Below, one piece after another: positions 7,563-49,520 of a stretch of 64,000 nt of DNA. Every line of letters begins with the position of its first letter. Positions within the stretch are counted from its first letter, which is position 1. The stretch lies in the IMG/VR virus record IMGVR_UViG_3300044712_000810, positions 248,001 to 312,000 of that record. The stretch is one strand, 5' to 3'. The notes beneath the pieces are model-generated. The model was not told the origin of the DNA. It saw only the letters and a program-made list of their open reading frames with translations, and searched no databases. Made by a program: the position numbers and the translations under genes.

Positions 7563-7784
7563 ATGGCTAGACCTATAATTGCAATGGGAAATCCTAGTAT
7601 GAATATGCATGGATTTAATATAACTGGTAAAAAAGAAGAGTCAGTAGCAAGTTTATTAAATGGTATTGATTTCGATAAATTATTCTCACTTCTTACTACA
7701 GATACTAAACTTAAAATTCTTGAATTACTAGAAGATGATAAATTTGTATTAAAGCTTAAAAAGTCATGTATTGAGGATATCTGA
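7563..7784 (+). CDS. Small protein with K(-7) C-terminal motif
   Basis: Ends KLKKSCIEDI; similar tail to the next gene. Confidence 0.6.
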   Translation: MARPIIAMGNPSMNMHGFNITGKKEESVASLLNGIDFDKLFSLLTTDTKLKILELLEDDKFVLKLKKSCIEDI

Positions 7785-8017
7785 TGAGTACTTTACATAT
7801 TGCAGATACAACAATGTGGATAACTAGAAATCAAGAATATGATAGTGCGACTATAGCTGTTAATTATTTACAAGTTATTGTTAAAGCATTAAATGATCCG
7901 GATTTAATAAAATATATAAATGAAAACTTGAATGAACAAGGTCGAAGAAATTTACTATCATTATTAAGTGATGATGCTAAATTTGAGTTAATAAAAACTG
8001 TAATAGAGGAGATTTAA
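7784..8017 (+). CDS. Small protein with K(-7) C-terminal motif
   Basis: Ends LIKTVIEEI; stop/start overlaps on both sides. Confidence 0.6.
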   Translation: MSTLHIADTTMWITRNQEYDSATIAVNYLQVIVKALNDPDLIKYINENLNEQGRRNLLSLLSDDAKFELIKTVIEEI

Positions 8018-9225
8018 TGAATCTACTCAAAAAACATACAACAATTGTTAATGAACCTGGAAAGATTATTCTAAATGATTTTAGACAGGAACAATTTAAT
8101 ATGTTAGGATACTTTCTTGATCTTTCAATGAAATATGTATCCAAACAAAATAAAAATTATCTCGATGGATATAAGATTACAATTAAAGATAAATTCTCAT
8201 ATTGTGGTTTATATAATAACGAGATTAAAGAAGTATGTATTGAAATCAATGTTGATCATATTGATAAAGATACAGGTGAAGTAAAAACTGAAGTTAAGAA
8301 ACTTTTAGATTTTTATGTTCCCAATCTTGTAGATAAACAATTTTACATATTAAATGGAACGATCTATGTTCCAACAATGTATATATTAGATAAACCAATC
8401 AGTATCAAAAAGAGCAGTTTTAAATTATATGGATTATTCAATAGTCTCACTGCATTTCTTGAAAAGAATATGGTAATCTTTACTGGTATTAACATGCCGT
8501 TTGATTACTTTTATCAACTATTTCTAAACAGTGAAGAAGATATTGAATTGTATAAGAAAATTGCTAAAGATCATAGTTTAGTTGAAAAAATACATACTAC
8601 TGATAACATTGAAAAATATTTTGATGGTATTATTAAGAAAAGTACTATTGCAGAAGCGCAAGCACATTTTGACAATCTTCTTATCGATGATTACACAAAA
8701 GAATTATATTGTGCATGTTACAATATGAAACCTGAAGATGTCACTACAAAAAACTTATTTAAAATGGCAATAGATATGTTTGTCACTGGTAAAGTTCCAG
8801 CATATATTAACTTAAATGCCAAGCGAATCATGTTCATGGAACTTATGTTAGCACCTGTATTTAAAGTAATGGCAAGAGTAGCACAACAAGCATCTATTGG
8901 ATATAAAGTCGATGAAATGAAACTCGACAAGTTTGCACTTATTAAATACTTTTTGAAAAACAAAGAAAAGAAAAGCAAAAGTCCAGAGTCTATTGGACTC
9001 AGTGGAAACTACATATATAATATTGCAAACTTGATGTCTAGTGTTATGGTACACAAAGTTTGTTTCAAAAACCCTGGAAGTGACAATCCACCAAGCACAA
9101 TATCTAATCTACATAAAAGTCATTTCCGTCGAATTTGTCCTGTTACAGTATCTAACGAAAATCCAGGCGAAACACTTAGCATCTTACCAGATATAAAACT
9201 CGATAAATTCGGTCAATTTTTATAA
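8017..9225 (+). CDS. Phage RNA polymerase, beta-like N-terminal half
   Basis: C-terminal LHKSHFRRICPVTVSNENPGETLS resembles beta H.THYGRVCPIETPEG; YVPNLVDKQFYILNG resembles the beta N-terminal IP...G.FIING. Confidence 0.7.
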   Translation: MNLLKKHTTIVNEPGKIILNDFRQEQFNMLGYFLDLSMKYVSKQNKNYLDGYKITIKDKFSYCGLYNNEIKEVCIEINVDHIDKDTGEVKTEVKKLLDFYVPNLVDKQFYILNGTIYVPTMYILDKPISIKKSSFKLYGLFNSLTAFLEKNMVIFTGINMPFDYFYQLFLNSEEDIELYKKIAKDHSLVEKIHTTDNIEKYFDGIIKKSTIAEAQAHFDNLLIDDYTKELYCACYNMKPEDVTTKNLFKMAIDMFVTGKVPAYINLNAKRIMFMELMLAPVFKVMARVAQQASIGYKVDEMKLDKFALIKYFLKNKEKKSKSPESIGLSGNYIYNIANLMSSVMVHKVCFKNPGSDNPPSTISNLHKSHFRRICPVTVSNENPGETLSILPDIKLDKFGQFL

Positions 9226-9278
9226 TCCAATCAAATTATCACGGAGGGGAGTAAAATCCCCTCCAATTGGAGATTCTT

Positions 9279-9692
9279 ATGAATTTAAAAGGTATTACAA
9301 ATGCATTAAATACCGTATTTTCAGTATCTTCAGGTGCAACATCCGGTACTGCAAATATTTCATTTTCACAACCTGTTGCAACTACTACTGCAACAACATA
9401 TTCAACAACTAGTAATGGAGCTGGACAATGGGTAACATATCCATATGGACATCCATATAATCCTGCACCACAACAACCAGCACCTGTATCAGCACCATAT
9501 CAACAAGTATACCCGACATATCCACAGTACATCCAAGTAGAACAATCAGCAGAACAGTTATTACTTTCACTTGACACTGAAAAAGTTAAAGAGAAATTAA
9601 AAGATATGTCAACTGTAAAACTTTTAGCATTTATTGAAATTCTTAACGAACTAAAAGAAGAAGCAACAAAAATGGCGGTAACAAATCTATGA
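9279..9692 (+). CDS. Protein with T/S/P/Q/Y low-complexity N-terminus and K(-7) C-terminal motif
   Basis: Ends EEATKMAVTNL. Confidence 0.6.
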   Translation: MNLKGITNALNTVFSVSSGATSGTANISFSQPVATTTATTYSTTSNGAGQWVTYPYGHPYNPAPQQPAPVSAPYQQVYPTYPQYIQVEQSAEQLLLSLDTEKVKEKLKDMSTVKLLAFIEILNELKEEATKMAVTNL

Positions 9693-9988
9693 ATCAACTT
9701 GATACACTTGTTGTTGATAGTTTACATGTAACTCAACAATTTTCAGCATCTTCATATCTAACGTCCTTCAATGGAAGTGAAATACAAATATCTAATAACT
9801 TAATGGTTGGACAAAATATTAAATGTAAAACACTTGAATGTGAAGATATAAAAATGTCTAGTACTAAGATTGTTTCATTTATGGAAGATATATTAAAACA
9901 AACACCAGTTGAACAAATCACTGCATATATTTTACATTTGGAAGAACTTAAAACGATGGCACAAAAGGTAGCTTTGGAGAAACTATGA
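9689..9988 (+). CDS. Small protein with K(-7) motif; C-terminal module similar to the previous gene
   Basis: Ends LEELKTMAQKVALEKL. Confidence 0.6.
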   Translation: MNQLDTLVVDSLHVTQQFSASSYLTSFNGSEIQISNNLMVGQNIKCKTLECEDIKMSSTKIVSFMEDILKQTPVEQITAYILHLEELKTMAQKVALEKL

Positions 9989-10383
9989 CAAAAAAAGAAC
10001 TAAACAAAAATCTTCGTATGCTTGGTAAATTTATTTATCATACTAAATGGAACGATGAACCAAGAAGACGATTATGTTCACATATCATGGATAAGGTATT
10101 TAATTATGGACCTATTAAAGATTTTCCAAATCAAAATACTCATGGTTGTGATATACCTGAAACTCAAGTAACACATCTTGGAAATTATGAAATTGAAACT
10201 AGAGATAATAAAAGAATTAGAAAATTTACACATGGATTTAATTTTAAATTCGCAATAAGTTTTCAAAAATGGAGAGGCAGAGATAAAGAACATTATTTAG
10301 TTGATTATTTAGAATCAAATGGTGCACTTGAAGATGAAGCATATCTTCTTGAAATTACAAAACTTATGATTGAAGCAATATAA
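9985..10383 (+). CDS. Small protein with K(-7) motif
   Basis: Ends EDEAYLLEITKLMIEAI. Confidence 0.6.
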   Translation: MTKKELNKNLRMLGKFIYHTKWNDEPRRRLCSHIMDKVFNYGPIKDFPNQNTHGCDIPETQVTHLGNYEIETRDNKRIRKFTHGFNFKFAISFQKWRGRDKEHYLVDYLESNGALEDEAYLLEITKLMIEAI

Positions 10384-10799
10384 TGACAGAACGACAATTT
10401 AAAATCTTATATAATAAAGTTATAAAAACTAGTTGTAAAAAGAAAACAATAAATCCCGGAACCCAATGGGAAAAACAAGTATCTGAATTTAATCATGAGA
10501 TTATTCCAGATATATTAAAATTTGGAGTTTTTAAAACATTTGAATTAGAATCTGGATATCATTGTTGTTTAATTAAACCAAAAAATATTGAAGATTTTTC
10601 ATTAAAACTTGATGCGTTCAATCTATCATTAAATATAGAAAAAATGGAAGCATATTATGTTGGCGGAACTATTAGAATTAAAGTATCAAATATGAAAAAA
10701 GTATACTTTAATTTCTTAAATTATTTAATTACAAATAAGGCACACGAGGATGAAGATTATATTATTAATCTTCAAAAAATACTAATAGTAAATCTATGA
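10383..10799 (+). CDS. Small protein with K(-7) motif; tail paralogous to the previous gene
   Basis: Ends EDEDYIINLQKILIVNL. Confidence 0.6.
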   Translation: MTERQFKILYNKVIKTSCKKKTINPGTQWEKQVSEFNHEIIPDILKFGVFKTFELESGYHCCLIKPKNIEDFSLKLDAFNLSLNIEKMEAYYVGGTIRIKVSNMKKVYFNFLNYLITNKAHEDEDYIINLQKILIVNL

Positions 10800-11023
10800 T
10801 GGACATTTTATATTTCATTAAAACACATCGATATATCGAACTTGATGATATACGAATAATGTTCGATGGACAAATTAGAAAAATGCATGACTATAAACAT
10901 ATATTTAGTAATAATTTATATAGGACTATGACCATTGATGAATTATTAAATAGATTTGACTTAGATTGTTTACCTGAATATTTTAGAATTGAAGTACAAA
11001 AACTTTTACTACTCGGAGTGTAA
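10796..11023 (+). CDS. Small protein with K(-7) motif
   Basis: Ends RIEVQKLLLLGV. Confidence 0.55.
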   Translation: MMDILYFIKTHRYIELDDIRIMFDGQIRKMHDYKHIFSNNLYRTMTIDELLNRFDLDCLPEYFRIEVQKLLLLGV

Positions 11024-15579: not shown

Positions 15580-16515
15580 ATGCAACACTACTCGTTCGCG
15601 AACATTTTGATCTTTGGATTGTGCGTAGTTTTAGCACTTTTCATTGATCTCCACACTCACAAAAAGGACGAACCAATCAGCGTTAAAAGCGCTGCACTCT
15701 GGTCTGTCTTCTGGGTAGGTCTGGCGCTCCTGTTTTCCGTCTATATTGGCGCAACACACGGAGCCGATCAATCATCGCTATTCCTCGCCGGATATCTACT
15801 CGAGAAATCTCTCTCAGTGGACAATCTGTTCGTGTTCATGGCGGTGTTTGCATCATTCGGAATTCAAGACAAATATCAGCACCGAATTCTATACTTCGGT
15901 ATTATCGGTGCTCTCATCTTGCGATTTATCTTCATTGCCATCGGCAGCAGTTTCTTGCTCATTGCCGGAAAATGGGCATTAACAGCTTTTGCCTTATTCG
16001 TTTTGTGGTCCGCATGGAAAATGTGGAAATCCACGGATGATGACAATGAAGAAATAGTCGATTACACGGATCATTGGTCTGTAAAAATCGCAAAAAAGTT
16101 CCTTCCGGTATATCCTCACCGAGACGGCCATAACTTCTTTCACAAAGGAGCTTGTACGCCGTTCTTCCTGTGTCTGATAGTAATCGAAGTCGCAGACGTA
16201 ATGTTTGCATTCGACTCTGTTCCTGCCGTCATAGCAGTAACACAGGAACCATTCTTGGTATATACATCCAACATCTTCGCCATTCTCGGCTTGAGGTCAA
16301 TGTACTTCTTGCTGTCAGCGGCTAAAAGATATCTCTGTCACCTTGAAAAAGCAGTTATCATCGTGCTGGTCTTCATCGGCGTCAAGATGCTTCTTGATGT
16401 CTTTGGGCTTGTCCACATTACTCCGGTGGCAAGCTTGATCATCGTGGCAGCTGTACTCATCGGCGGCGTCATTTCGTCATTCTGTTACCCTGAAAAAGAA
16501 GAAATCACACAATAA
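15580..16515 (+). CDS. terC: TerC/Alx-family membrane protein
   Basis: GYLLEKSLSVDNLFVF, QHRILYFGIIGALILR, ADVMFAFDSVPAVIAVT, TSNIFAILGLRSMYF. Confidence 0.95.
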   Translation: MQHYSFANILIFGLCVVLALFIDLHTHKKDEPISVKSAALWSVFWVGLALLFSVYIGATHGADQSSLFLAGYLLEKSLSVDNLFVFMAVFASFGIQDKYQHRILYFGIIGALILRFIFIAIGSSFLLIAGKWALTAFALFVLWSAWKMWKSTDDDNEEIVDYTDHWSVKIAKKFLPVYPHRDGHNFFHKGACTPFFLCLIVIEVADVMFAFDSVPAVIAVTQEPFLVYTSNIFAILGLRSMYFLLSAAKRYLCHLEKAVIIVLVFIGVKMLLDVFGLVHITPVASLIIVAAVLIGGVISSFCYPEKEEITQ

Positions 16516-16526
16516 GGAGCTACATC

Positions 16527-16979
16527 ATGGGATTCTGGGACGATATCAAAGGTGCTGTTTCCAGCGGCTTTAAGTCGCTTTCGGATGAAGTGTCAAAATA
16601 CAAAAACCAGCCCTTCCTGGATGCTGTCCTTGCTGCTGCCGCAATGGTCGCAGCAGCAGATGGTAAGGTCGATTCTTCCGAAAAGAAGAAGCTCATGTCG
16701 TTCGTCACAAACAACGAACTTCTTTCGGTCTTCGAACCCGCCGTGGTCATCGAGACTTTCAAAAAATATCTCGACATCGTCGAACGCGATCCGGACTTCG
16801 GTCCAACTGAATGCATGGCAGTCGTCAAGAAGCTGAAGGGCAAACCCGAAGCTGACATTGCCATCAGCGTATGCTGCGCCATCGGCAAAGCTGATGGCGA
16901 CTTCGATAAGGACGAAAAAGAAATCGTCAAACAAATGTGCGTTGCTCTCGGCATCGATCCGGCGCAGTTCAGTCTGTAA
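16527..16979 (+). CDS. terB: TerB-family protein
   Basis: AMVAAADGKVDSSEK and IGKADGDFDKDEK...MCVALGIDP. Confidence 0.9.
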   Translation: MGFWDDIKGAVSSGFKSLSDEVSKYKNQPFLDAVLAAAAMVAAADGKVDSSEKKKLMSFVTNNELLSVFEPAVVIETFKKYLDIVERDPDFGPTECMAVVKKLKGKPEADIAISVCCAIGKADGDFDKDEKEIVKQMCVALGIDPAQFSL

Positions 16980-20426: not shown

Positions 20427-21098
20427 ATGGATATTAAAAAGACTACAATTCGTGCGGCTGTTGGTGTACCTGTCAAAATCACACTCGAATCAAATCCTAC
20501 AACAGGATATTCATGGAGTGAACAACATGACAGAAAGAAAATCGTATTAGAATCTAAAAAGTTTAAGACTAGTTTCCCACTTGGTGAAACAGTCGGTAAT
20601 TTATTTGGATGTGGCGGAATTGATATCTTTGATTTTATGCCAACAAGAGATGATTGTATTACTGAAATTACTTTCACATATCTTTCCCCTTGTGGTGATA
20701 TTGAAAGAAGAGAAGTATATGAAGTCATCATTGGCGAAGGTGAAGAAGTAATTGCGCCACTTGATTTTGATAAAGATGAAAGAGATGACACTCCAGTCAT
20801 TAACGAAACAGATTTAGTCAATGCAACAACAATTGTTAGTACAATGAATACATATCAGAATGATGTGAATATTCCAGGTGTTGGTATTATACCTGCTCAT
20901 ATTATTCGTGAATCTTTCCATCATTGTGATTGTGAAGATCAACCTACTCATACTCACCATTCATATGAATCACATTCTCGTTCTTGGGATGATTCATCAA
21001 GCTCAAGTTCGTCATATTCATCCGATTCCTCAAGTTCTTACTCTAGTTCTGATTCAAGTTCTTGTGGCGGTGATTCTGGTGGATGTGGCGGCGACTAA
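20427..21098 (+). CDS. Chagasin/I42 protease-inhibitor-like domain fused to a His/Ser/Gly-rich tail
   Basis: KITLESNPTTGYSW signature; C-terminal SSSSSSYSSDSSSS...CGGDSGGCGGD. Confidence 0.65.
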   Translation: MDIKKTTIRAAVGVPVKITLESNPTTGYSWSEQHDRKKIVLESKKFKTSFPLGETVGNLFGCGGIDIFDFMPTRDDCITEITFTYLSPCGDIERREVYEVIIGEGEEVIAPLDFDKDERDDTPVINETDLVNATTIVSTMNTYQNDVNIPGVGIIPAHIIRESFHHCDCEDQPTHTHHSYESHSRSWDDSSSSSSSYSSDSSSSYSSSDSSSCGGDSGGCGGD

Positions 21099-21109
21099 CA
21101 GGAGACATT

Positions 21110-21304
21110 ATGAACGACAACTGGTTATCACCACAAATACAAGCTTACTCAAGACTTTTACGTACTGAAATGCCTTTTATGGTTGATTATGAATCAACAT
21201 TCGATTTATCAACGTTAGGTGATAGAATTGGACTAACAAAAATAAAATCAAGACAAAAAGTTGATAAATTCAAAGATATTACTAATATATTAGATTGGGA
21301 GTAA
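21110..21304 (+). CDS. Small protein ending in DWE
   Basis: ...ITNILDWE. Confidence 0.55.
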   Translation: MNDNWLSPQIQAYSRLLRTEMPFMVDYESTFDLSTLGDRIGLTKIKSRQKVDKFKDITNILDWE

Positions 21305-21306
21305 TT

Positions 21307-21501
21307 ATGGGAATTTTAGATAGTATAAGATATGAAAATGAGAAACGCATGTATGAAAGACAATTAAGTACTAGAATAGGTAATATCAAAATAGGAAACC
21401 CATGTGGTGAATTAGTTACAAAAGGATATGTAGATTGTTCATTATCACCGTACAAATATAAATCAATGTCGGAATGTTTAAATATATTTGATTGGGAGTA
21501 A
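21307..21501 (+). CDS. Small protein ending in DWE
   Basis: ...CLNIFDWE. Confidence 0.55.
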   Translation: MGILDSIRYENEKRMYERQLSTRIGNIKIGNPCGELVTKGYVDCSLSPYKYKSMSECLNIFDWE

Positions 21502-21504
21502 TAT

Positions 21505-21726
21505 ATGTCAATAGATGATTATTTACAAGATAGTATGTGGCAACAACCAAATAATAATTCATTATTAAATCATCCAGGTCTACAAATGATTGGACCTTTA
21601 AAGAATGATACATTACCATATGCAATGTCACATGAACAAATTGAAAAATTAAAGGAACTATTTGCAGTTCCTCAAAAGCAACCCAAAACAATGTCAGACA
21701 TCTTCGACACACTAAACTGGGAATAA
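21505..21726 (+). CDS. Small protein ending in NWE
   Basis: ...IFDTLNWE. Confidence 0.55.
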   Translation: MSIDDYLQDSMWQQPNNNSLLNHPGLQMIGPLKNDTLPYAMSHEQIEKLKELFAVPQKQPKTMSDIFDTLNWE

Positions 21727-25291: not shown

Positions 25292-25606
25292 ATGGCTGAC
25301 AAAGTTCTTTACTTCGTGAATGAACATTTCTTTAACATGAATCTGAACAACGCTGGCGATAAGTACAACAAGAAAATGCAGATCGACAATGTCACTCTTG
25401 ATATCGTCGATGAATCACAGAAGTTTTATATCGACGAAGCAGAAAGAACTTTTTCGAAAGAAAAGTATTTCGAAACTCCTGGCGAAGCTGGTCAGTACAT
25501 CCAGAAAAGGATGTCCGACGAACTGCAGAAGTATCGTGAAATCATCGACACCATCGATAAGGAACGCGAAGATATCGAGGTGGAGATTCTTTCCACCACA
25601 AACTAA
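25292..25606 (+). CDS. Hypothetical protein, GC-richer codon usage
   Basis: 104-aa ORF with SD AGGAG. Confidence 0.6.
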   Translation: MADKVLYFVNEHFFNMNLNNAGDKYNKKMQIDNVTLDIVDESQKFYIDEAERTFSKEKYFETPGEAGQYIQKRMSDELQKYREIIDTIDKEREDIEVEILSTTN

Positions 25607-25890
25607 TGGTTGTAAAACGTTACAATCCAAAAGATGATCGTCGTACTGTATATTATGTATGGTACGACGATTCTGAATTTAATTTAAAAAAGATACCGGA
25701 CTTGAAGATTATCAAAGTCGGTAAAAAATTAAAACGTCGAACATACGCTCGAAGACCTAAAGAAACAATTCATATCAATAGTTTTGATTCTTATGCTAGT
25801 ATAGTATTTGAGAAGTTAAAACTATACAATCATTATATTAGTAAAAATGAAATGTTAAATATAATGAAATATATAATTGCGGATATATAA
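25606..25890 (+). CDS. Small protein with K(-7) motif
   Basis: Ends LNIMKYIIADI; N-terminus similar to the next gene. Confidence 0.55.
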   Translation: MVVKRYNPKDDRRTVYYVWYDDSEFNLKKIPDLKIIKVGKKLKRRTYARRPKETIHINSFDSYASIVFEKLKLYNHYISKNEMLNIMKYIIADI

Positions 25891-26151
25891 ATGGTTATTC
25901 GCAGATCATTAAGAGGTCGAGGCACACGATTTTATGTTTGGTTAGATGCTAAAGACTATGTCGCTGGTAACTGGCCAAATTATAGATTTAACTATGATGG
26001 TAATCGTCATAGTCCATTAACGTATGAAATTGAAAGACCAAAAGATTCTATGCATACGTTAGAAAGAATTGCACGTAATGCCAGAAATGGTGTTAATGCA
26101 ACTCCAGAACAATATTTAGCAATACAAAAGTTAATAATAGAAAATTTGTAG
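25891..26151 (+). CDS. Small protein with K(-7) motif
   Basis: Ends LAIQKLIIENL. Confidence 0.55.
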   Translation: MVIRRSLRGRGTRFYVWLDAKDYVAGNWPNYRFNYDGNRHSPLTYEIERPKDSMHTLERIARNARNGVNATPEQYLAIQKLIIENL

Positions 26152-33969: not shown

Positions 33970-34020
33970 ATGTTGGTGCGGGGTTTCGACCCCGCATCCA
34001 TTTAATCCTTCGAGATTATT

Positions 34021-34550: not shown

Positions 34551-35009
34551 GTGTTCACTGAATTACTTGGTAAAATAATAGTTGATATCGAAATAGGACA
34601 CGATGAAGAAGACAATGATGCAATATATTTCTTGTTAAATGATAAAACAAAACTCAAAATGTATCATCAACAAGATTGTTGTGAATCAGTATCAATTAAA
34701 GAAATAGTTGGAGACATAAATAATTTAATTGGGCATCCAATTCTCGAAGCGGATGAATCAGTTAAAGAAACTCGTGGCGATGATGAAGAATCTGAAACAT
34801 GGACATTTTATAAATTAAGCACGATAAAAGGTAATGTAAACATATCATGGTATGGAACATCCAATGGATATTATTCTGAATCTGTTAATATTGCATATGA
34901 AGATTTTGATATGGAAGATGAAATCTTAAGACTTTCAAAAAAATTAACAGAAATAACCAATGGTGATGTTGCATTAGCAATTAAAAAATATATAATTGAA
35001 AATATGTAA
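34551..35009 (+). CDS. Conserved phage protein with K(-7) tail
   Basis: MYHQQDCCESV...ETWTFY...WYGTSNGYYSESV; ends IKKYIIENM. Confidence 0.65.
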   Translation: MFTELLGKIIVDIEIGHDEEDNDAIYFLLNDKTKLKMYHQQDCCESVSIKEIVGDINNLIGHPILEADESVKETRGDDEESETWTFYKLSTIKGNVNISWYGTSNGYYSESVNIAYEDFDMEDEILRLSKKLTEITNGDVALAIKKYIIENM

Positions 35010-35057: not shown

Positions 35058-35303
35058 ATGGATATTAAGGAAAACACAATAATCATTAGATGTGATTATT
35101 CTTTAAGTGATCAGAGTGACTGTAAATTATATAAATCAAATCCTGGACAAAATATGATGTTCAATGTGTGTGCACATATTTTAGGAACCAGATGTGATTG
35201 GTGTAATCATCCACAAAGAATTAAAGAAAAAATAGTTGAATTATATTTACAACATTTTGAAACACATGAAGAATTTCAGAAACTATTATTGGAAAAGATA
35301 TGA
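35058..35303 (+). CDS. Cys-rich small protein, K(-7) family
   Basis: Ends EEFQKLLLEKI. Confidence 0.6.
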   Translation: MDIKENTIIIRCDYSLSDQSDCKLYKSNPGQNMMFNVCAHILGTRCDWCNHPQRIKEKIVELYLQHFETHEEFQKLLLEKI

Positions 35304-35575
35304 ATTTTGATCTACATGTCATGTGTGATTTTGATGATGACTTTAATCAATGCCCATGTTTTAAAAAAGAAGAATATGCGCGTATGCAATATTACCATGA
35401 TGAAAATGGAAAACCCGGACATAGAGAAGCGGGAGTAATAACTACTTGTGAATTTTATGATTCAGATAATAATGGTTGTTATGAACAATCACGGTATGTA
35501 CAAAGTGTTGTAGAACTATATTTACTACATTGTAAATCTGAACTGTTTCAAAAGGTATTAATAGAAAAAATATGA
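35300..35575 (+). CDS. Cys-rich small protein, K(-7) family
   Basis: Ends ELFQKVLIEKI. Confidence 0.6.
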   Translation: MNFDLHVMCDFDDDFNQCPCFKKEEYARMQYYHDENGKPGHREAGVITTCEFYDSDNNGCYEQSRYVQSVVELYLLHCKSELFQKVLIEKI

Positions 35576-35847
35576 TAGATCTACCATTTGAACCAACATG
35601 GGTTTTATATGAATGTCCTCATTGGTTAAGTTACGCAGTATATAAATTAAATCGTAATTGTGAATTTTATGAAGAAGGTAAAGTATATGAATCAGATTTA
35701 ATGACACGTCGATGTAAATTCTCAAAAGAAATAAACCATCGTGATTGTCGGTGTACTGAAAGACAAAAACGATTAATTATTAACGAGTATTTACGTTTAT
35801 TTGAAACTCCTGAGGAGTTTCAAAAGTTGTTGTTGGAGAAAATATGA
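35572..35847 (+). CDS. Cys-rich small protein, K(-7) family
   Basis: Ends EEFQKLLLEKI. Confidence 0.6.
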   Translation: MIDLPFEPTWVLYECPHWLSYAVYKLNRNCEFYEEGKVYESDLMTRRCKFSKEINHRDCRCTERQKRLIINEYLRLFETPEEFQKLLLEKI

Positions 35848-36155
35848 GTGCACATCAAGACTTTATGACAGCATTGGATACATATTTAGATTTACTTAAA
35901 ACCACACGTATTCGAACTATTTATTTAAATGGATACATATATGAATTAGTATTAGTAGAAGGCGAGTTATTAGTATATGAATTTTATAATCATGATAAAA
36001 GTGATCATATTGTGTATGAAACAAGATCTCATGATTATCCTGGTGATTGTACAATGTTACAGACTCTTATGATGGGTGCACATATGCACTCATCAGATCA
36101 AAAAATGAAAGAATTAGAAATTGATATACAGAAACGTATAATGGAATTAATATGA
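35844..36155 (+). CDS. Small protein, K(-7) family
   Basis: Ends IDIQKRIMELI. Confidence 0.6.
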   Translation: MSAHQDFMTALDTYLDLLKTTRIRTIYLNGYIYELVLVEGELLVYEFYNHDKSDHIVYETRSHDYPGDCTMLQTLMMGAHMHSSDQKMKELEIDIQKRIMELI

Positions 36156-36439
36156 CAGATTATGATATTGATAATATTGCAGATGCATTATTAAACAATA
36201 CTCCAATAATGGCATTTAGAGTAGAATATCACTGTGACTATCAATTTTCAACAGATCGTACAGCGTGTCCATATTTTTCAAAGAGTAATTGGTCATCTAA
36301 ACGGTGTAGTCACTCGCAACATGATGATCATAAATTATGCGATAATAAAGAAAAAATTAAGAAAACAGTTGTTAAAGAATTCATTAAACATTTTGATAAT
36401 ATAACAGATTTTCAAAAACTTTTACTCGAGGAAGTATGA
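36152..36439 (+). CDS. Cys-rich small protein, K(-7) family
   Basis: Ends TDFQKLLLEEV. Confidence 0.6.
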   Translation: MTDYDIDNIADALLNNTPIMAFRVEYHCDYQFSTDRTACPYFSKSNWSSKRCSHSQHDDHKLCDNKEKIKKTVVKEFIKHFDNITDFQKLLLEEV

Positions 36440-36672
36440 TAAAATTAGAATACAAATGCGCACACAGCACTTTAAAAGAAAAACGCACATGTTCAAAATT
36501 TAAATTAGTATATCATAATGCAGGTACCGAATATAAATATGCTGAATGTAAATGGATTAAATATGGCCAGTGTAATAATTTTGATCTTATGAAACAAGAA
36601 TTATTACAAGAATGTTTAGTCATGTTTGATGATAATGAACTAGTTCAAAAAGCAATAATTGCCGAAATTTGA
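36436..36672 (+). CDS. Cys-rich small protein, K(-7) family
   Basis: Ends ELVQKAIIAEI. Confidence 0.6.
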   Translation: MIKLEYKCAHSTLKEKRTCSKFKLVYHNAGTEYKYAECKWIKYGQCNNFDLMKQELLQECLVMFDDNELVQKAIIAEI

Positions 36673-36686
36673 ATATTGTCTGATTT

Positions 36687-36697
36687 CATATAAAAAT
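36687..36697 (+). promoter_or_regulatory. Promoter-like motif, AAAAAT variant
   Basis: CATATAAAAAT before tRNA-Cys. Confidence 0.55.
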
Positions 36698-36720
36698 AGT
36701 AAACAAGTACGCGTGTAATA

Positions 36721-36800
36721 GGTGACGTGGCTCGAGTGGTCGAAGGCACGGGTCTGCAAAACCTGTATTACCGTCAGTTCGAATCTGACCGTCACCTCCA
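36721..36800 (+). tRNA. tRNA-Cys(GCA)
   Basis: CT GCA AA; U73; slightly long variable region. Confidence 0.85.
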
Positions 36801-36824
36801 TTTTAACTTTTTTGGAGAAACACA

Positions 36825-36995
36825 ATGAAAATGCAATTAATGGTTAAATGTCATTATTCAAACAAACGTGATTGTCCATTTTATGGCGAAACAGAATTTC
36901 ATCATACTGAAGGATGTTCACATTGTGTAACTTCATTGTGTACCAATAAGATTGCAATTAGCGATTTTTTAAAACAACTTATAGCTGATAAATAA
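36825..36995 (+). CDS. Cys-rich small protein, K(-7) family (not in ORF track)
   Basis: 56 aa, KCHYSNKRDCPFY...DFLKQLIADK; SD GGAG. Confidence 0.55.
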   Translation: MKMQLMVKCHYSNKRDCPFYGETEFHHTEGCSHCVTSLCTNKIAISDFLKQLIADK

Positions 36996-37180: not shown

Positions 37181-37414
37181 ATGCCTGCATTAATTTGGTT
37201 GATTACAGGCGCAGCAACAGTCGTGTCAGCATTGAAGTATCTTGCCGACAAACAGGAAACCGACAACAAACAAACCGAACTTGGAAACAAGATTGTTGAA
37301 CAGAATTTGAAAATTCAACAACTTGAACAAAAGATCAAGTCCGATGCAGAAGTTCGCGCCAAGGCAGTTAAAATCATCGAAGAACACTACAAGCCTGAAG
37401 AGGACGATAAGTAA
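37181..37414 (+). CDS. Membrane-anchored coiled-coil protein
   Basis: N-terminal TM helix followed by a coiled coil. Confidence 0.55.
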   Translation: MPALIWLITGAATVVSALKYLADKQETDNKQTELGNKIVEQNLKIQQLEQKIKSDAEVRAKAVKIIEEHYKPEEDDK

Positions 37415-38136
37415 TGAAACGTTATCTTCTGCTCCTGTTTATGTGCATACTTCCTTTCATCACTGGTTGTGAACCTGGTGAAGGTGAAGTTAAGTACAAA
37501 AACAAATTCTTGCCATTACTATCTGCTCCTGAAGCAGCAATATATAAGAAAGTTCAAAAAGAATGGGATTATTCATATTTGATGCCAATCCGAAATGCGA
37601 TTTATCTTCGTCTTTCAGCGCCGGCTGATACTGATCTTCCATTCTATGATATTGCACCAACATTGGTGTTCATGAATGAGAAATATCTTAAAGAAAAAAA
37701 TAAAGATTTTAAATCCAAAAACATACTCTTTAGTGATATTAATGAATCATGGTGGGCGGCATTAGTTTCAAACGTTGAAAAAAGTGGCATCGATCTCAAT
37801 CAAATGATGGTTGATAAAGATAAACAGATTATCGTAACTATTTACGATGGTCGTCCACAAAAGAATCTGACTACTCCACAACCACCAAAGGTTGAAGTAA
37901 AGAAACCTGATATTAAAGAAACTAACATCGACAAAGTTGATGTTTCCGAATTACTTCCATATACTGAATATGAAATGCTTATGAAAGAAACCAAAACTTG
38001 CAGTTACGCGACTGAAATGCTTCTTAAGAAGCTTCGCGGTCAAAGATATCTATTCAAACAAGATAAAGATGAAATCATGCGTGAAGTTCTATTCTGTAAG
38101 AATATTGAACTTCAACAGCTGATTACAACTAAATAG
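37414..38136 (+). CDS. Lipoprotein
   Basis: MKRYLLLLFMCILPFITGC lipobox. Confidence 0.65.
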   Translation: MKRYLLLLFMCILPFITGCEPGEGEVKYKNKFLPLLSAPEAAIYKKVQKEWDYSYLMPIRNAIYLRLSAPADTDLPFYDIAPTLVFMNEKYLKEKNKDFKSKNILFSDINESWWAALVSNVEKSGIDLNQMMVDKDKQIIVTIYDGRPQKNLTTPQPPKVEVKKPDIKETNIDKVDVSELLPYTEYEMLMKETKTCSYATEMLLKKLRGQRYLFKQDKDEIMREVLFCKNIELQQLITTK

Positions 38137-41246: not shown

Positions 41247-41415
41247 GAGAAATAAATATGGCCGATGATACTTTTGATTTTATAGTTAAAAAGATCGAAC
41301 AAGTAACCGATACTGTGTCCGAAGTGGCATCAGTTGAAAGTAAAATAACGGCTAAAAAGGAAGAGTTTAAGAAACTCATTGAAGAAGTTCTAACAGAGAA
41401 GGGAGTAATTTAGAA

Positions 41416-42746: not shown

Positions 42747-42821
42747 CTCTGTATAGCTCAGTGGCAGAGCTGGGAACTCTAAATTCCCCGGTCGCGAGTT
42801 CGAGTCTCGCTACAGAGGCCA
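42747..42821 (+). tRNA. Amber suppressor tRNA (anticodon CTA)
   Basis: CTCTGTA/TACAGAG, G73, CCA; GGGAA-CT CTA AA-TTCCC; canonical D-loop GG and TTCG. Confidence 0.88.
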
Positions 42822-45679: not shown

Positions 45680-47359
45680 ATGTCTGAAGTGAAGAAGGCT
45701 GAAATCGGAAAGAAGCAGCATCTGCGTGACTCCAAGAAAGTCGAACGCCTGAAGAACGTTCAGTTCGAGTACCATCGTGGTGATCCCTGCATCATCTTCA
45801 AGACCCATGGCGAACCTCAGAAGGTAATGAACTTTGCTCACTTTCTGAACGGCCACGACGAGATTCGTCTCGACGGCATGGGCGAACGCATTCGCGTTCG
45901 TTGCACCGAACAGAACTTTGCAGAGATTCTCGACGAGATCGCCACATGGGATGATGCAACAAAATATTCGGACTATTTCGATCAACTCAAGGTCGAACGC
46001 ACTTCTTTCCAGGAGCGCGTTGAAAAAATCCTAACCCACATCAGAAATCGTGGGCAGATTCAATTCGAGGATATCAATATCCTCCTGAAGAAGGATGTAA
46101 AAGTCCTTCTCAAGACTGGATTCGATACGGTCGAAGGCGGTGTCGTCGTCGATCTGTATCGCCAGACCTCATTCATGGGAGGCCAGTATTGGACCATCCG
46201 CGTCAATCAGATTGAATACGATGGCGGAAAATACCATGAACAGACTCATCATTATTCCATTCACGAATACAATGGATACATGAATATCACGGATCTTCCG
46301 GTCCGTCCCGTCAATGACGAAGAAATGATCTCACTTGAAGAGCGTGGCAAAAAGTTCATGACTTATGCCAACAATGCATCCTACGTTTATTGCGAAGGAT
46401 ACATGTATCGCAAAAGCTGGCTTGGCATCAACAAATGGAACTCCGAAGGGCGTGTCATGATTGACAACGAATCCTTCGGAAAATTCGATTCGAACTACGG
46501 TCGTGGATATCGCGATGATGAACACGGCACCGAAGTCTCCAAAGACATGATTTTCGCTCTTCCTTCCACTGTGAAGGGATACTCGATGAGAATCAAGTAT
46601 TGGGGCGAATTCCGCGTCGATGACCTTCGTCCTATCGAATTCCGCGAGAATGCTTTCGATCTTCTCGTTATGGACAACACCAAAAAGAAACTGGTGCGCG
46701 CTCTTGTCGAGAACAAGGCCACTTTCCGCGATCTGATCTCCGGAAAGGGCGGCGGCACCATCTTCCTGCTCTACGGTCCTCCGGGAACCGGTAAGACCCT
46801 GACCGCAGAAACCGTTTCGGAATTCCTGAAGCGTCCTCTGTACATGGTCAGCGTCGGTGAGCTCGGAACCACCGCAAATGAACTGGAAGCTCGTCTTCGC
46901 GACATTCTGGAACTCGCTACCACCTGGAACGCGATTCTCCTGATCGACGAAGCTGATATCTTCCTGGAGAAGAGAACCACAAACAACATCGAACGCAACG
47001 CCATGGTCGGCATCTTCCTGCGCCTGCTGGAATACTACTCCGGCGTTCTGTTCATGACCACCAACCGTGCGGAAACTCTCGATGAGGCATTCCTTTCGAG
47101 AATCTCCCTCGCCATGCACTATGACAAGCATGACGAAAAGACCCGCATGAAGATCTGGATTTCCCTGCTGTCCGAACAGGGCATCAAGCTGGATTCCCAG
47201 GATCTTGAAAAACTGGCCGTTTACGAACTGAACGGTCGTCAAATCAAAAACATGATCAAAATGGCCATGACTCTCGTCGCAAGCGACGGCGGTCGTGTTA
47301 CCATCGAGGTGATCGAAGAGATCATCAAACATCAAAAGCTCGAAACCAAAAAGAGCTAA
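45680..47359 (+). CDS. AAA+ ATPase with long N-terminal domain
   Basis: GPPGTGKT, LLIDEADIFLEKR, FLRLLEYYSGVLFMTTNR, LNGRQIKN. Confidence 0.9.
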   Translation: MSEVKKAEIGKKQHLRDSKKVERLKNVQFEYHRGDPCIIFKTHGEPQKVMNFAHFLNGHDEIRLDGMGERIRVRCTEQNFAEILDEIATWDDATKYSDYFDQLKVERTSFQERVEKILTHIRNRGQIQFEDINILLKKDVKVLLKTGFDTVEGGVVVDLYRQTSFMGGQYWTIRVNQIEYDGGKYHEQTHHYSIHEYNGYMNITDLPVRPVNDEEMISLEERGKKFMTYANNASYVYCEGYMYRKSWLGINKWNSEGRVMIDNESFGKFDSNYGRGYRDDEHGTEVSKDMIFALPSTVKGYSMRIKYWGEFRVDDLRPIEFRENAFDLLVMDNTKKKLVRALVENKATFRDLISGKGGGTIFLLYGPPGTGKTLTAETVSEFLKRPLYMVSVGELGTTANELEARLRDILELATTWNAILLIDEADIFLEKRTTNNIERNAMVGIFLRLLEYYSGVLFMTTNRAETLDEAFLSRISLAMHYDKHDEKTRMKIWISLLSEQGIKLDSQDLEKLAVYELNGRQIKNMIKMAMTLVASDGGRVTIEVIEEIIKHQKLETKKS

Positions 47360-47832: not shown

Positions 47833-47887
47833 CCTAAAAGGCGGGGGACAGGATGTTCCCCGCTGAATTATTTTTACTTGGAGAAAT

Positions 47888-48064
47888 ATGTCACAATCAA
47901 CTGAAGAACTTGTAAATATAGCACATTATCATACAATGAAAGCAAGAATGCATGAACTAACTGCATATTCATATTTAATTCCTGAAAAATTCATTGATGA
48001 GATGATTGACGAATTAGAAAATATAAAAATAAACTTACTTAAACGCAAAATTGAGGACCTTTAA
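47888..48064 (+). CDS. Small protein with K(-7) motif (not in ORF track)
   Basis: 58 aa, SD GGAG; ends NLLKRKIEDL. Confidence 0.5.
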   Translation: MSQSTEELVNIAHYHTMKARMHELTAYSYLIPEKFIDEMIDELENIKINLLKRKIEDL

Positions 48065-48475
48065 ATGTCAGAAAATAAAGAACCAAAACAAGTTATTGTC
48101 ATGCGCAAAGATTTAAATATGCGCAAAGGCAAAATGTGTGCACAAGCAGCACATGCAAGTCTCGCTGTCATTTTAAGAAAGATGGTAGTTGAACAAAACT
48201 ACGACATGGTATCACGCATGTTAGTTACAATAAAAGATAGTCCATTCGATGAATGGTTGACTAATAGATTTAAAAAAGTAGTACTATCATGTGATAGTGA
48301 ACAAGAAATAATCGATATCGAATCAAAATGCAACGAACTTCGAATTCCAAACGCATTAATTACAGATGCAGGTCTTACTGAATTCGATGGAGTTCCAACA
48401 AAAACCTGCATAGCAATCGGTCCATGGGATCCTGATGAAATTGATAAAGTAACTGGAAACTTAAAGTTGTTGTAA
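48065..48475 (+). CDS. pth2: Peptidyl-tRNA hydrolase Pth2 (archaeal/eukaryotic type)
   Basis: KQVIVMRKDLNMRKGKMCAQAAHAS, KKVVL, ITDAGLTEF, TCIAIGP. Confidence 0.92.
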   Translation: MSENKEPKQVIVMRKDLNMRKGKMCAQAAHASLAVILRKMVVEQNYDMVSRMLVTIKDSPFDEWLTNRFKKVVLSCDSEQEIIDIESKCNELRIPNALITDAGLTEFDGVPTKTCIAIGPWDPDEIDKVTGNLKLL

Positions 48476-48476
48476 T

Positions 48477-49016
48477 ATGGAAGAAGTTATAGAATGGGTT
48501 TGTATGACATGGTTAAGAATCTTTGGAAGTAAAAAAACCAAAGAAAATATATATGCTGCTAAAAAATTAAACATGCCCATTGATGGAAGAATTTTTACAG
48601 TTGTAAATGAAGTTTTAGATACTACACTTGAACAACTTTGTACAAAAAAACAAATAACAGCATTCACACATGATAGAAATTCAGGAAATATAAAAGTTAC
48701 ATTTAACGGAAACATAATATTAACTACAATTAAATCATCTGGACGATTTTTATCATATGGAAAAATATTCCGTAATGATAAACAAATTTATGAATGGAAT
48801 TCTAACAATGATGATGGTAATATTTCACCAAGAAATCACTACTTGTTTATAAAAACTTGTAATAATTTTGTGATAAATAATATAGTCGACAATAAAAATT
48901 TTAGTTTAAAAAATTTTGTTAAAATAGAAAATGATACTGAAGTTTTACTTAACATACTTAATGAAATTGACGATGTTAAAATAGAACTACAAAAAAAACT
49001 AATACAGGAGCTATAA
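48477..49016 (+). CDS. Hypothetical protein, paralog of the next gene, K(-7) tail
   Basis: Shared YEWN and NFSL motifs; ends IELQKKLIQEL. Confidence 0.6.
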   Translation: MEEVIEWVCMTWLRIFGSKKTKENIYAAKKLNMPIDGRIFTVVNEVLDTTLEQLCTKKQITAFTHDRNSGNIKVTFNGNIILTTIKSSGRFLSYGKIFRNDKQIYEWNSNNDDGNISPRNHYLFIKTCNNFVINNIVDNKNFSLKNFVKIENDTEVLLNILNEIDDVKIELQKKLIQEL

Positions 49017-49520
49017 GTGTTTAACACTATACGCGAATGGTTTGCACCAAAAAATGTTCTTACTGATAAACGCGCAAGAGAAGCATTAGAATTAACAGGA
49101 AACCTTAATTATCCAATTGATACAACTCTTGATAGTGTTCTTTATAAATTATTAACAACAAGCGCATTAACAGAAGTAAAACAACAACCATATGAAATAG
49201 ATTTTGCATTCTCAAATGGAATTAAGTTTGTTAATGTTTGGAATTCAAATAAATACTATGCATGGTTAAATAAAGGTAAAATCATAAATGAATCTGAAGT
49301 TCTATATGAATGGAATGATTCGTGTGTTACTCCTATAACTATGGCCACATTGAAAGTAAAAATTGCACAATTTTGTGTAGGTAGAATATTATCACATCAA
49401 AACTTTAGTCTAATAAAACATATTGAAAATATTGATAATTTAAACCAATTAACACGAATGTTAGATGAAATTGATGAAGCAAAAATATTATTGCAAAAGA
49501 AAATCATAACAGAATTATAA
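49017..49520 (+). CDS. Hypothetical protein, paralog of the previous gene, K(-7) tail
   Basis: Ends ILLQKKIITEL. Confidence 0.6.
   Translation: MFNTIREWFAPKNVLTDKRAREALELTGNLNYPIDTTLDSVLYKLLTTSALTEVKQQPYEIDFAFSNGIKFVNVWNSNKYYAWLNKGKIINESEVLYEWNDSCVTPITMATLKVKIAQFCVGRILSHQNFSLIKHIENIDNLNQLTRMLDEIDEAKILLQKKIITEL

What the first reader, a model, noticed from the sequence alone, without database searches (positions are those of the whole stretch)
7563..49520. About 20 small proteins share a C-terminal helix with Lys exactly at position -7
Seen, last residues: KKSCIEDI (7563), IKTVIEEI (7784), TKMAVTNL (9279), QKVALEKL (9689), TKLMIEAI (9985), QKILIVNL (10383), QKLLLLGV (10796), MKYIIADI (25606), QKLIIENL (25891), KKYIIENM (34551), QKLLLEKI (35058), QKVLIEKI (35300), QKLLLEKI (35572), QKRIMELI (35844), QKLLLEEV (36152), QKAIIAEI (36436), LKQLIADK (36825), LKRKIEDL (47888), QKKLIQEL (48477), QKKIITEL (49017). 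K(-7) and an aliphatic/Met residue at -4 occur in all 20, and an aliphatic/Met terminus in 19. N-terminal domains differ between clusters, and codons vary synonymously, pointing to protein-level selection. Inference: a portable C-terminal tag. It could be a Lys acceptor or docking site for the phage Ubl system (adaptor logic like F-box/SOCS-box proteins), a handle for the AAA+/vWA proteins, or a capsid-packaging signal. Caveats: I chose members by eye in a Lys-rich proteome, and the acidic -2/-3 residues may partly reflect overlapping SD sequences.
Basis: partly seen in the sequence, partly recalled or inferred. Interest (0 to 1): 0.85.

Follow-up and report, generated by a model that had tools for sequence, protein, structure and literature searches.

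The report
Shared C-terminal helix tag, jumbo phage
About one in five proteins of this uncultivated 315-kb phage, otherwise unrelated to each other, end in the same short helix (…Q-K-h-h-I/L-E-x-I/L, then stop); selection keeps it at the protein level and it looks like a shared docking or address tag whose partner is unknown.

Summary
With unbiased gene calls, 20 of 103 window genes end with K(-7), aliphatic(-4) and aliphatic(-1), against 0.6 expected (P 2e-24). Over 88 kb of the same contig the count is 31 of 142 (P 8e-38). Other registers, other reading frames and related phages give background counts.

The signal is at the protein level. Lys and Gln codons follow genome usage. One paralog pair shares 11 of 12 tail residues, 8 of them through different codons. 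Tightly coupled genes without the tail lack the motif. Only the Glu(-3) codon choice (GAG excess) carries a Shine-Dalgarno imprint.

N-terminal parts are mostly unrelated: a four-Cys family, a DUF7448 domain and many orphan sequences. In the DUF7448 protein the last 10 residues extend beyond the C-terminus of its homologs. AlphaFold puts the tail in a terminal helix hairpin. No Pfam, PHROG, PDB or 1.84-billion-protein profile search finds a relative.

Best reading, by inference: a portable C-terminal docking or address helix that brings diverse accessory proteins to one partner. The Lys-acceptor idea is weakened, because a paralog has Arg and a homolog in the nearest relative has Cys at -7. 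Function is untested.

The parts
7563..7784 (+). Member gene; the ORF opens at 7494, and the in-frame ATG at 7563 just after the RNAP beta stop is the likely start. Tail ..LKKSCIEDI. Weak member.
   Evidence: the homolog in L004 has Cys at -7
7784..8017 (+). Member gene, 77 aa, tail ..LIKTVIEEI.
9267..9692 (+). Member gene, 141 aa, tail ..ATKMAVTNL. First of a five-gene array in a variable slot between a conserved 402-aa gene and the ligase.
9689..9988 (+). Member gene, 99 aa, tail ..AQKVALEKL.
9985..10383 (+). Member gene, 132 aa, tail ..ITKLMIEAI.
10383..10799 (+). Member gene, 138 aa, tail ..LQKILIVNL.
10796..11023 (+). Member gene, 75 aa, tail ..VQKLLLLGV.
25606..25890 (+). Member gene, 94 aa, tail ..IMKYIIADI; paralog of 25891.
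25891..26151 (+). Member gene, 86 aa, tail ..IQKLIIENL; TAG stop, next start 9 nt downstream.
34551..35009 (+). Member gene, 152 aa: a complete DUF7448 domain (residues 4-113), then two helices (121-135, 139-150). Tail ..AIKKYIIENM. The last 10 residues extend beyond the C-terminus of homologs.
35058..35303 (+). Member gene of the four-Cys family. The ORF opens at 35010; the database's 81-aa gene call implies an ATG at 35058. Tail ..EEFQKLLLEKI.
35300..35575 (+). Member gene, four-Cys family, 91 aa, tail ..LFQKVLIEKI.
35572..35847 (+). Member gene, four-Cys family, 91 aa, tail ..EEFQKLLLEKI. 11 of 12 tail residues are identical to the 35058 gene, 8 of them through different codons.
35844..36155 (+). 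Member gene, 103 aa, tail ..DIQKRIMELI.
36152..36439 (+). Member gene, four-Cys family, 95 aa, tail ..DFQKLLLEEV.
36436..36672 (+). Member gene, four-Cys family, 78 aa, tail ..LVQKAIIAEI. Not coupled to a downstream gene; a tRNA follows.
36825..36995 (+). Near-member, 56 aa, Cys-rich, tail ..DFLKQLIADK (ends in Lys); a tRNA follows.
47888..48064 (+). Member gene, 58 aa, tail ..LLKRKIEDL.
48477..49016 (+). Member gene, 179 aa, tail ..ELQKKLIQEL; paralog of 49017 (28% identity overall, 9 of 12 in the tail).
49017..49520 (+). Member gene, 167 aa, tail ..LLQKKIITEL.
1074..1427 (+). Doubtful: fits the strict pattern (..LKSTLLSL) but scores low on the PSSM and overlaps both neighbours. About one chance hit is expected.
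41258..41413 (+). Possible variant, 51 aa: a tail-like stretch (..EEFKKLIEEVL) followed by six more residues, so the motif is not terminal.
37414..38136 (+). Doubtful near-member, 240 aa, tail ..IELQQLITTK (Gln at -7, ends in Lys).

Best explanation
The window is part of a 314,837-bp uncultivated jumbo phage with a split multisubunit RNA polymerase. At least 20 of its proteins in the window, and 31 in 88 kb, share essentially one feature: their last 10 to 12 residues form an amphipathic helix with the consensus h(-9) Q(-8) K(-7) h h [I/L](-4) E x [I/L/V/M](-1), followed directly by the stop codon. Most members are small proteins with no database relatives. In the 21 best members an upstream helix and an acidic turn precede the tail, giving a hairpin of about 30 residues.

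I propose that this is a portable C-terminal docking or address motif. The hydrophobic face (-9, -5, -4, -1, with Gln -8 in its middle), the flanking Lys -7 and the free chain end would fit a groove on one common partner. Many different N-terminal domains would then be delivered to the same machine or place. The logic is that of the T4 internal proteins, which are diverse proteins sharing only a targeting peptide, or of F-box/PRANC adaptors.

Shown: the enrichment, the exact C-terminal register, protein-level selection, unrelated N-terminal parts, the extension on DUF7448, the predicted helicity and the absence of known relatives. Inferred: that the motif binds anything, that there is a single partner, and what that partner is (capsid or scaffold interior, a phage or host hub enzyme, or an AAA+ machine).
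For: - Enrichment and exact register.
- Protein-level selection: Lys and Gln codons match genome usage; information per codon position is 0.58/0.93/0.38; tail identity is 45% against 28% for the rest of paralog pairs, with 8 of 11 identical residues encoded differently in one pair.
- Independence from translational coupling: 17 coupled genes without the tail lack the motif, and 5 members are uncoupled or followed by tRNAs.
- Stop codons vary among members: TAA 15, TGA 13, TAG 3.
- Unrelated N-terminal parts: 29 BLAST groups, a four-Cys family, and a complete DUF7448 domain.
- None of the 119 listed DUF7448 homologs carries this tail (3 fit the bare pattern with unrelated ..LMGV ends), and one homolog ends 10 residues before the window protein does.
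- AlphaFold places terminal helices at 68-82/86-96 and at 121-135/139-150 in two unrelated members.
- Tails are nearly Pro/Gly-free and close to neutral.
- No member extends past the final aliphatic residue. The only exception is one possible variant.
- Members sit in variable small-gene slots that hold different genes in relatives.
- Precedent for diverse proteins sharing only a targeting peptide: PMC3012670.
Against: - No partner was identified and no binding was tested.
- The exact terminus could partly reflect common descent, and the locking of stops to downstream starts.
- Lys(-7)/Glu(-3) fits a plain i, i+4 helix salt bridge.
- Members found outside the window (L012, L019) match only the last helix; the 32-residue profile gives E 0.003 to 3.5. 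The hairpin is therefore not universal.
- The nearest relative's homolog has lost Lys(-7).
- Phages at about 50% RNAP beta identity have almost no such tails, so there is no deep conservation to lean on.
- AlphaFold confidence in the tails is moderate (pLDDT 68 to 79) and rests on thin alignments there.
Confidence: 0.45

Rival explanations
1. One large lineage-specific expansion. All members descend from one small gene. The C-terminal helix or hairpin is the conserved folding or dimerisation core (for example a four-helix bundle formed by two hairpins, possibly allowing heterodimers among paralogs), while the N-terminal parts diverged beyond recognition. On this view it is not an address tag.
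For: - Members occur in tandem arrays with recognisable paralog pairs.
- A hairpin of two amphipathic helices is predicted.
- Such expansions are known in jumbo phages, for example about 35 zinc-ribbon copies in Bacillus phage G (PMC7824862).
- Another phage of the clade has its own 15-gene array with a conserved C-terminus.
Against: - The DUF7448 member is a widespread, complete domain onto which the tail was added as a 10-residue extension, so not all members share descent.
- Members range from 58 to 465 aa and lie on both strands.
- A bundle-forming helix does not need to stop at exactly the same residue in 31 proteins.
- Out-of-window members share only the last helix.
Confidence: 0.28
2. 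C-terminal degron or handle for an AAA+ machine. The tail marks early accessory proteins for timed unfolding or proteolysis, by a host protease or by the phage AAA+ protein at 45680-47359.
For: - The motif is anchored at the free C-terminus and ends in an aliphatic residue.
- A classical AAA+ protein lies just upstream of one member cluster.
- C-terminal degrons are established in bacteria (general knowledge).
Against: - Acidic or polar residues at -2/-3 are, from memory of the classic tail-stability work, stabilising rather than destabilising.
- The tail is predicted structured (helical), whereas degrons are usually disordered.
- There is no direct evidence.
Confidence: 0.08
3. Lys(-7) is the acceptor, or the tail is the recognition site, for the phage-encoded ubiquitin-like conjugation system.
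For: - Lys is present in 31 of about 34 tails.
- A ThiF-type E1 gene lies at 3240-4004 (E 9e-13), with a weak Prok-E2_D match at 1382-2335.
- ThiF is also found next to RNAP beta in the closest relative.
Against: - Arg replaces Lys in one of five clear paralogs (L012:136-495) and in L012:2768-2977.
- Cys replaces Lys in the L004 homolog.
- The E2 match is below Pfam's threshold, and no Ubl or JAB gene was confirmed here.
- Lys(-7)/Glu(-3) has a simpler structural reading.
Confidence: 0.05
4. By-product of nucleotide-level signals at gene junctions: a Shine-Dalgarno sequence, ATGA overlap, or a promoter or recombination cassette read in frame.
For: - GAG is over-used at Glu(-3): 6 of 12 against 11% genome-wide.
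- NNA codons are over-used near the stop.
- 16 of 21 members abut or overlap the next start.
Against: - Codons at Gln(-8) and Lys(-7) follow genome usage, and third positions are the least conserved.
- Identical tails are encoded by different codons.
- Coupled genes without the tail lack the motif, and uncoupled members keep it.
- Other frames of the same DNA give background counts.
Confidence: 0.03

Closest known systems
T4 capsid targeting sequence (CTS) of the internal proteins
   Same: A very diverse set of small phage accessory or anti-defence proteins share only a short terminal peptide that sends them to one destination (PMC3012670). The portable-tag logic is the same.
   Different: The CTS is N-terminal and, from memory, is removed by the prohead protease. 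Here the motif is at the extreme C-terminus. No cleavage, no virion location and no sequence similarity are shown.
Poxvirus PRANC / F-box-like C-terminal domains, and cellular F-box or SOCS-box adaptors
   Same: Viral multigene families in which variable domains carry a short helical module at the C-terminus that docks on one shared machine.
   Different: Pfam scans found no F-box or PRANC match at E <= 0.05. There is no ankyrin part. This is a bacterial virus, and no SCF-like partner is known.
Encapsulin cargo-loading peptides and microcompartment encapsulation peptides
   Same: Short terminal peptides, amphipathic helices in the microcompartment case, that load unrelated cargo proteins into a protein shell. 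Encapsulin shells have the phage capsid fold.
   Different: Encapsulin peptides are Gly/Ser-rich and extended, whereas these tails are almost Gly/Pro-free helices. No shell genes were seen in the 98 kb examined.
C-terminal clamp-binding motifs (PIP box; bacterial QL[SD]LF; T4 gp45-binding tails)
   Same: A Gln followed by spaced hydrophobic residues at the extreme C-terminus of several different proteins, all docking on one hub.
   Different: There is no aromatic pair at the last two positions, and Lys always follows Gln where the bacterial motif needs Leu. More than 30 clamp clients would be unprecedented.
Scaffolding-protein C-terminal helix-turn-helix (P22 gp8, 80alpha scaffold / SaPI1 CpmB)
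   Same: A terminal helix hairpin of about 30 residues that binds the inside of an HK97-fold capsid, and that is shared by competing proteins (from memory).
   Different: Those hairpins act through basic residues. These tails are close to neutral (mean +0.4 over 12 residues, -1.3 over 30).
Lineage-specific small-protein expansions in jumbo phages (e.g. zinc ribbons of Bacillus phage G)
   Same: Tandem arrays of many small paralogs in one jumbo phage (PMC7824862). The four-Cys family at 35058-36995 is of this type.
   Different: Here the shared element crosses family boundaries, is only 10 to 30 residues long, and is fixed at the chain end.

Membership tests
DUF7448 (PF24240), for the 34551-35009 protein only | Match to the Pfam model above its gathering score, over the full domain | tested here: met
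   E 2.3e-30, 105.5 bits against a cutoff of 27, model positions 2-103 of 104 on residues 4-113; phrog_2650 E 6e-42; BFVD fold matches to DUF7448 proteins. The tail lies outside the domain.
T4-type capsid targeting sequence | N-terminal position of the shared peptide | tested here: not met
   The shared peptide is the last 10 to 12 residues.
T4-type capsid targeting sequence | Tagged proteins are found inside the head and are processed by the prohead protease | not testable with these tools
   The phage is uncultivated and no proteome exists.
PIP box (PCNA / gp45-type clamp binding) | Q-x-x-[ILM]-x-x-[FY]-[FY] | tested here: not met
   Gln(-8) and h(-5) fit, but -2 is polar (17 of 21 are D, E, N or K) and -1 is aliphatic, never aromatic.
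Bacterial beta-clamp binding motif | QL[SD]LF or QLxLxh | tested here: not met
   The residue after Gln is Lys in every member that has Gln(-8).
F-box / PRANC | Match to the Pfam F-box or PRANC models | tested here: not met
   Pfam scans of 20 members at E <= 0.05 listed no such family. Short modules can escape single-sequence scans, so this excludes membership only at that sensitivity.
Ankyrin repeat | Tandem 33-residue repeats matching the Pfam Ank models | tested here: not met
   The only library-wide profile hit is a 567-aa ankyrin-like repeat protein, whose 7 weak stretches add up to E 3e-7. Members have one copy and no Ank match. The resemblance is to the second ankyrin helix only.
Encapsulin cargo-loading peptide | Gly/Ser-rich extended C-terminal peptide, with an encapsulin shell gene nearby | tested here: not met
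   Pro+Gly count is 0.19 per 12 residues against 0.96 in other genes, and the tails are predicted helical. No shell gene appears among the Pfam-annotated neighbours.
Scaffolding-protein C-terminal helix-turn-helix | Basic hairpin that binds the coat protein electrostatically | tested here: not met
   A hairpin is predicted, but net charge is close to zero or negative. Coat binding is not testable.
Membrane-targeting amphipathic C-terminal helix (MinD/FtsA type) | Cationic amphipathic helix at the C-terminus | tested here: not met
   The helix is amphipathic (hydrophobic moment 1.24 against 1.02, P 0.02) but carries Glu at -3/-10 and has a mean charge of +0.4.

The most novel reading that the evidence does not exclude
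A proteome-wide C-terminal address code in a jumbo phage. A roughly 10-residue helical tag, readable only at the free chain end, would send dozens of unrelated accessory proteins (perhaps 60 to 100 genome-wide) to a single destination, such as the capsid interior for co-injection or a phage-built compartment or machine. New cargo would be recruited simply by extending a gene's 3' end, as seen for DUF7448. This would be the C-terminal, much larger counterpart of the T4 capsid targeting sequence, and a ready-made cargo-loading tag.
Probability: 0.25. Interest if true: 0.85.

Novelty: new variant of a known kind. Interest (0 to 1): 0.62.

Why it matters
Most jumbo-phage genes are small and have no known relatives or function. 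A short signal shared by about a fifth of them would group them by destination or partner, and so give an experimental handle: one pull-down with the tail could name the hub. If the tag is an address signal, it shows how a phage recruits new cargo by a 10-residue extension, and it would be usable for loading proteins into phage particles or compartments. If it is only a dimerisation core, it still defines a new module without database relatives, and a large fast-evolving family typical of host-conflict genes.

Tried and rejected
- **Chance or cherry-picking:** rejected.
- **Nucleotide-level origin** (Shine-Dalgarno, ATGA overlap, cassette): rejected except for the codon choice at -3 and the NNA codons near the stop.
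- **Known domain:** Pfam and PHROG scans of members gave nothing except DUF7448. A PDB sequence profile gave nothing (best E 0.21). Foldseek against the PDB gave nothing at E <= 0.001.
- **Profile of the 32-residue module against 1.84 billion proteins:** it returned only an ankyrin-like repeat protein through score accumulation. The profile is too short to give a census.
- **Word-based search with the module of the 35010 protein:** it found only itself.
- **Family A in IMG/VR and in metagenome contigs:** no relatives.
- **Homology between this module and the C-terminal motif of the L009 array:** rejected (hhalign probability 0.5%). I first took that array, with K/R at -7 and Leu at -4, as a relative; it is only an analogy.
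- **Membrane, DNA or basic-scaffold binding:** rejected on charge.
- **AlphaFold of family A:** confident only in the C-terminal helices (mean pLDDT 52), so the four-Cys domain fold is unknown.
- **Mixed alignment of tails with DUF7448 homologs:** it misaligned and was discarded.
- **Walking the contig leftwards:** no members in 214,406-223,747, which holds a minus-strand operon of larger proteins. The remaining roughly 214 kb of the contig was not fetched.

Full report
**What the window is**

The window has 35% G+C and nearly all its genes lie on the + strand. It carries:
- split multisubunit RNA polymerase pieces (5600-7561 and 54167-55468);
- a class II ribonucleotide reductase, NAMPT, an ATP-dependent ligase and an AAA+ protein;
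- TerC/TerB, a chagasin-type inhibitor, radical SAM, vWA and PTH2 genes;
- 27 tRNA genes.

It is bases 248,001-312,000 of IMGVR_UViG_3300044712_000810, which is 314,837 bp long. No isolated phage is close. The best RNAP beta matches among deposited phages are Staphylococcus S6/PALS_2 and Yersinia phiR1-37/YerA41, at 24-28% identity. Metagenomic relatives reach 62% (a 6.4-kb contig, L004) and about 50% (many contigs).

**Checking the observation**

- K(-7), [ILVM](-4), [ILVM](-1) occurs at the exact C-terminus of 20 genes.
- The same pattern occurs at 0.6% of internal positions, so 0.6 genes are expected (P 2e-24).
- Shifting the register by 1 to 14 residues gives 0 to 2 genes.
- Gln at -8 is enriched 4.1-fold.

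I walked the contig leftwards (L001, L012, L019). This added members on both strands and of up to 465 aa. The total is 31 of 142 genes in 88 kb against 0.9 expected, P 8e-38. A further 9 kb to the left has none.

A leave-one-out PSSM of the last 12 residues puts 23 of 127 C-termini above the 99.9th percentile of internal windows. Loci from related and unrelated phages give 5 of 323.

As a composition control I scored all 4,049 stop codons in six frames that have at least 12 open codons upstream. Of these, 35 pass the threshold, and 32 of the 35 are ends of called genes.

**Protein level or nucleotide level**

The evidence points to selection on the protein:
- Lys(-7) uses AAA and AAG, and Gln(-8) uses CAA and CAG, in the genome's usual proportions.
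- Information content per codon position over -9 to -1 is 0.58, 0.93 and 0.38, the signature of selection for hydrophobicity rather than for bases.
- In paralog pairs the last 12 residues are 45% identical against 28% for the rest of the protein.
- The 35010 and 35572 proteins share 11 of 12 tail residues, and 8 of those 11 are encoded by different codons.

Glu(-3) is GAG in 6 of 12 cases against 11% genome-wide, and NNA codons are over-used next to ATGA overlaps. Coupling does not create the motif, however. Seventeen tightly coupled genes without the tail show Lys(-7) once, Gln(-8) never and Glu(-3) once. Five members are uncoupled or followed by tRNA genes. Members end in all three stop codons.

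**Anatomy**

- Consensus: h(-9) Q(-8) K(-7) x/h(-6) h(-5) [I/L](-4) E(-3) polar(-2) [I/L/V/M](-1).
- In the 21 best members an upstream helix (hhxxhhxxh) and an acidic turn precede it, with a loop that varies by 0 to 6 residues.
- AlphaFold predicts terminal helix pairs in two unrelated members. In the four-Cys protein they are 68-82 and 86-96, at pLDDT 72-79, with the rest of the model unreliable. In the DUF7448 protein they are 121-135 and 139-150, at pLDDT 82 falling to 68, after a confident beta domain.
- Tails are almost free of Pro and Gly (0.19 against 0.96 per 12 residues), close to neutral in charge, and modestly more amphipathic than other C-termini.
- On a helical wheel, -9, -5, -4, -1 and Gln(-8) share one face. 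Lys(-7) and Glu(-3) flank it and are spaced i, i+4 (my inference from the consensus).
- The members found outside the window match the 32-residue profile only weakly, and only at their last helix. The element common to all members is therefore the final 10 to 12 residues.

**Portability**

With the last 35 residues removed, the 31 members fall into 29 BLAST-unrelated groups. The recognisable families are a four-Cys family nested in the tRNA array and a few pairs.

The clearest case is 34551-35009. It holds a complete DUF7448 domain (PF24240, E 2e-30, residues 4-113). That family has thousands of members in phages and giant viruses. None of the 119 listed homologs has this tail; the 3 that fit the bare pattern end in ..LMGV sequences unrelated to it. 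In a pairwise alignment the homolog P0145 ends at ..KGDVLL, opposite the window protein's ..NGDVAL. The window protein then continues for 10 more residues, which are the tail, and it also has an 11-residue insertion upstream. In this case the tail was added to a pre-existing C-terminus.

Members also sit in variable slots. The five-gene array at 9267-11023 lies between a conserved 402-aa gene and the ligase, where relatives carry other small genes without tails.

**Relatives**

- Phages at about 50% RNAP beta identity have 0 to 2 tail-like ends per 22 kb.
- In L004 (62% identity) the homolog of the 7563 gene, found next to RNAP beta as in the window, aligns without gaps to the C-terminus. It keeps the hydrophobic positions but has Cys at -7.
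- One of five clear paralogs has Arg at -7 (L012:136-495).
- A more distant phage (L009) has its own array of about 15 small genes with a conserved C-terminus. Profile-profile comparison shows no relation to this module, so it is an analogy only.

**Known families**

Nothing matches. Pfam and PHROGs gave no family for the members apart from DUF7448, and the PDB sequence search gave nothing. A profile search of 1.84 billion representative proteins returned one ankyrin-like repeat protein, through seven weak repeats. The last word-indexed search found only the query itself.

**Interpretation**

Five features need explaining together: an exact chain-end register across unrelated proteins, strong protein-level constraint, an amphipathic and non-basic helix, acquisition by extension, and restriction to proteins without database relatives in variable slots.

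A shared docking or address motif read at the free C-terminus explains them best (confidence 0.45). The closest precedent in logic is the T4 internal proteins, described as highly diverse defence-countering proteins that share only a capsid targeting sequence (PMC3012670). That signal, however, is N-terminal.

The main rival is a folding or dimerisation core of one large expansion (0.28). It accounts for the arrays, but fits the DUF7448 extension and the invariant chain end less well. The degron or AAA+ handle reading (0.08) and the Ubl acceptor reading (0.05) remain possible. The Ubl version is weakened by the Arg and Cys substitutions, and by the fact that only the E1 (ThiF, E 9e-13) is solidly detected. 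A nucleotide-level artefact is essentially excluded (0.03).

**Limits**

- Gene calls are my own heuristic.
- Only 98 kb of the 315-kb contig were read.
- The partner is unknown.
- Nothing about binding, localisation or stability has been tested.

Noticed in passing
window 42747-42821: One of the 27 tRNA genes has the anticodon CTA, so it would read TAG (ARAGORN labels it Pyl). TAG still ends 24 of 142 called genes, including 3 strict tail-bearing ones, so TAG is a genuine stop at least for those. Read-through of the TAG at 26149-26151 would run in frame into the next gene (26161-26481).
   Followed up: partly
window 21083-21726: Three tandem small paralogs (73, 68 and 73 aa) share a different C-terminal ending (..LDWE, ..FDWE, ..LNWE). 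This is a second family in the same phage with a conserved chain end.
   Followed up: no
L009:16202-19706: A distant relative (36% RNAP beta identity) has a tandem array of about 15 genes of 63-78 aa ending in h-h-[K/R]-x-[K/R]-L-x-x-x. hhalign finds no relation to the window's module.
   Followed up: yes
L004:2739-5996 (also L008:11993-12202): In the closest relative the RNAP beta gene is interrupted. A 565-587-aa piece is followed by an HNH endonuclease gene (4643-5365) and then a 34-aa ORF carrying the conserved RNAP beta C-terminal end. This suggests a homing-endonuclease insertion or a split gene.
   Followed up: no
window 1382-4004; L004:462-1250: A ThiF-type E1 gene (3240-4004, E 9e-13) lies upstream of RNAP beta, with a sub-threshold Prok-E2_D match in the 317-aa protein at 1382-2335. 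ThiF is also next to RNAP beta in L004. No Ubl or JAB gene was confirmed.
   Followed up: partly
L020 (contig 214,406-226,000), minus strand: This is an operon of larger proteins, with a radical SAM enzyme, and with small proteins that have Cys/His-rich C-termini (for example a 167-aa protein ending in repeated C-H-x-x-C motifs). It may be a peptide-modification cluster. It holds no tail-bearing genes.
   Followed up: no
window 15580-16979, 20427-21098, 48065-48475: Unusual auxiliary genes for a phage: TerC (E 3e-45), TerB (E 6e-19), a chagasin-family peptidase inhibitor I42 with a Gly/Cys/Asp-rich tail, and a PTH2 peptidyl-tRNA hydrolase (E 2e-34). The PTH2 gene sits between tail-bearing genes.
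   Followed up: no
window 34911-35006: In the DUF7448 protein, the helix before the tail (..LRLSKKLTEI..) itself resembles the tail motif. MAFFT aligned other members' tails to it, so this could be an internal duplication of the motif.
   Followed up: no
window 33890-34096: An uncalled 68-codon ORF with a TTG start ends in a high-scoring tail-like sequence (..LLKAKILNI, PSSM 13.0). The rest of its translation looks non-protein-like, so it is probably chance or a decayed copy.
   Followed up: partly
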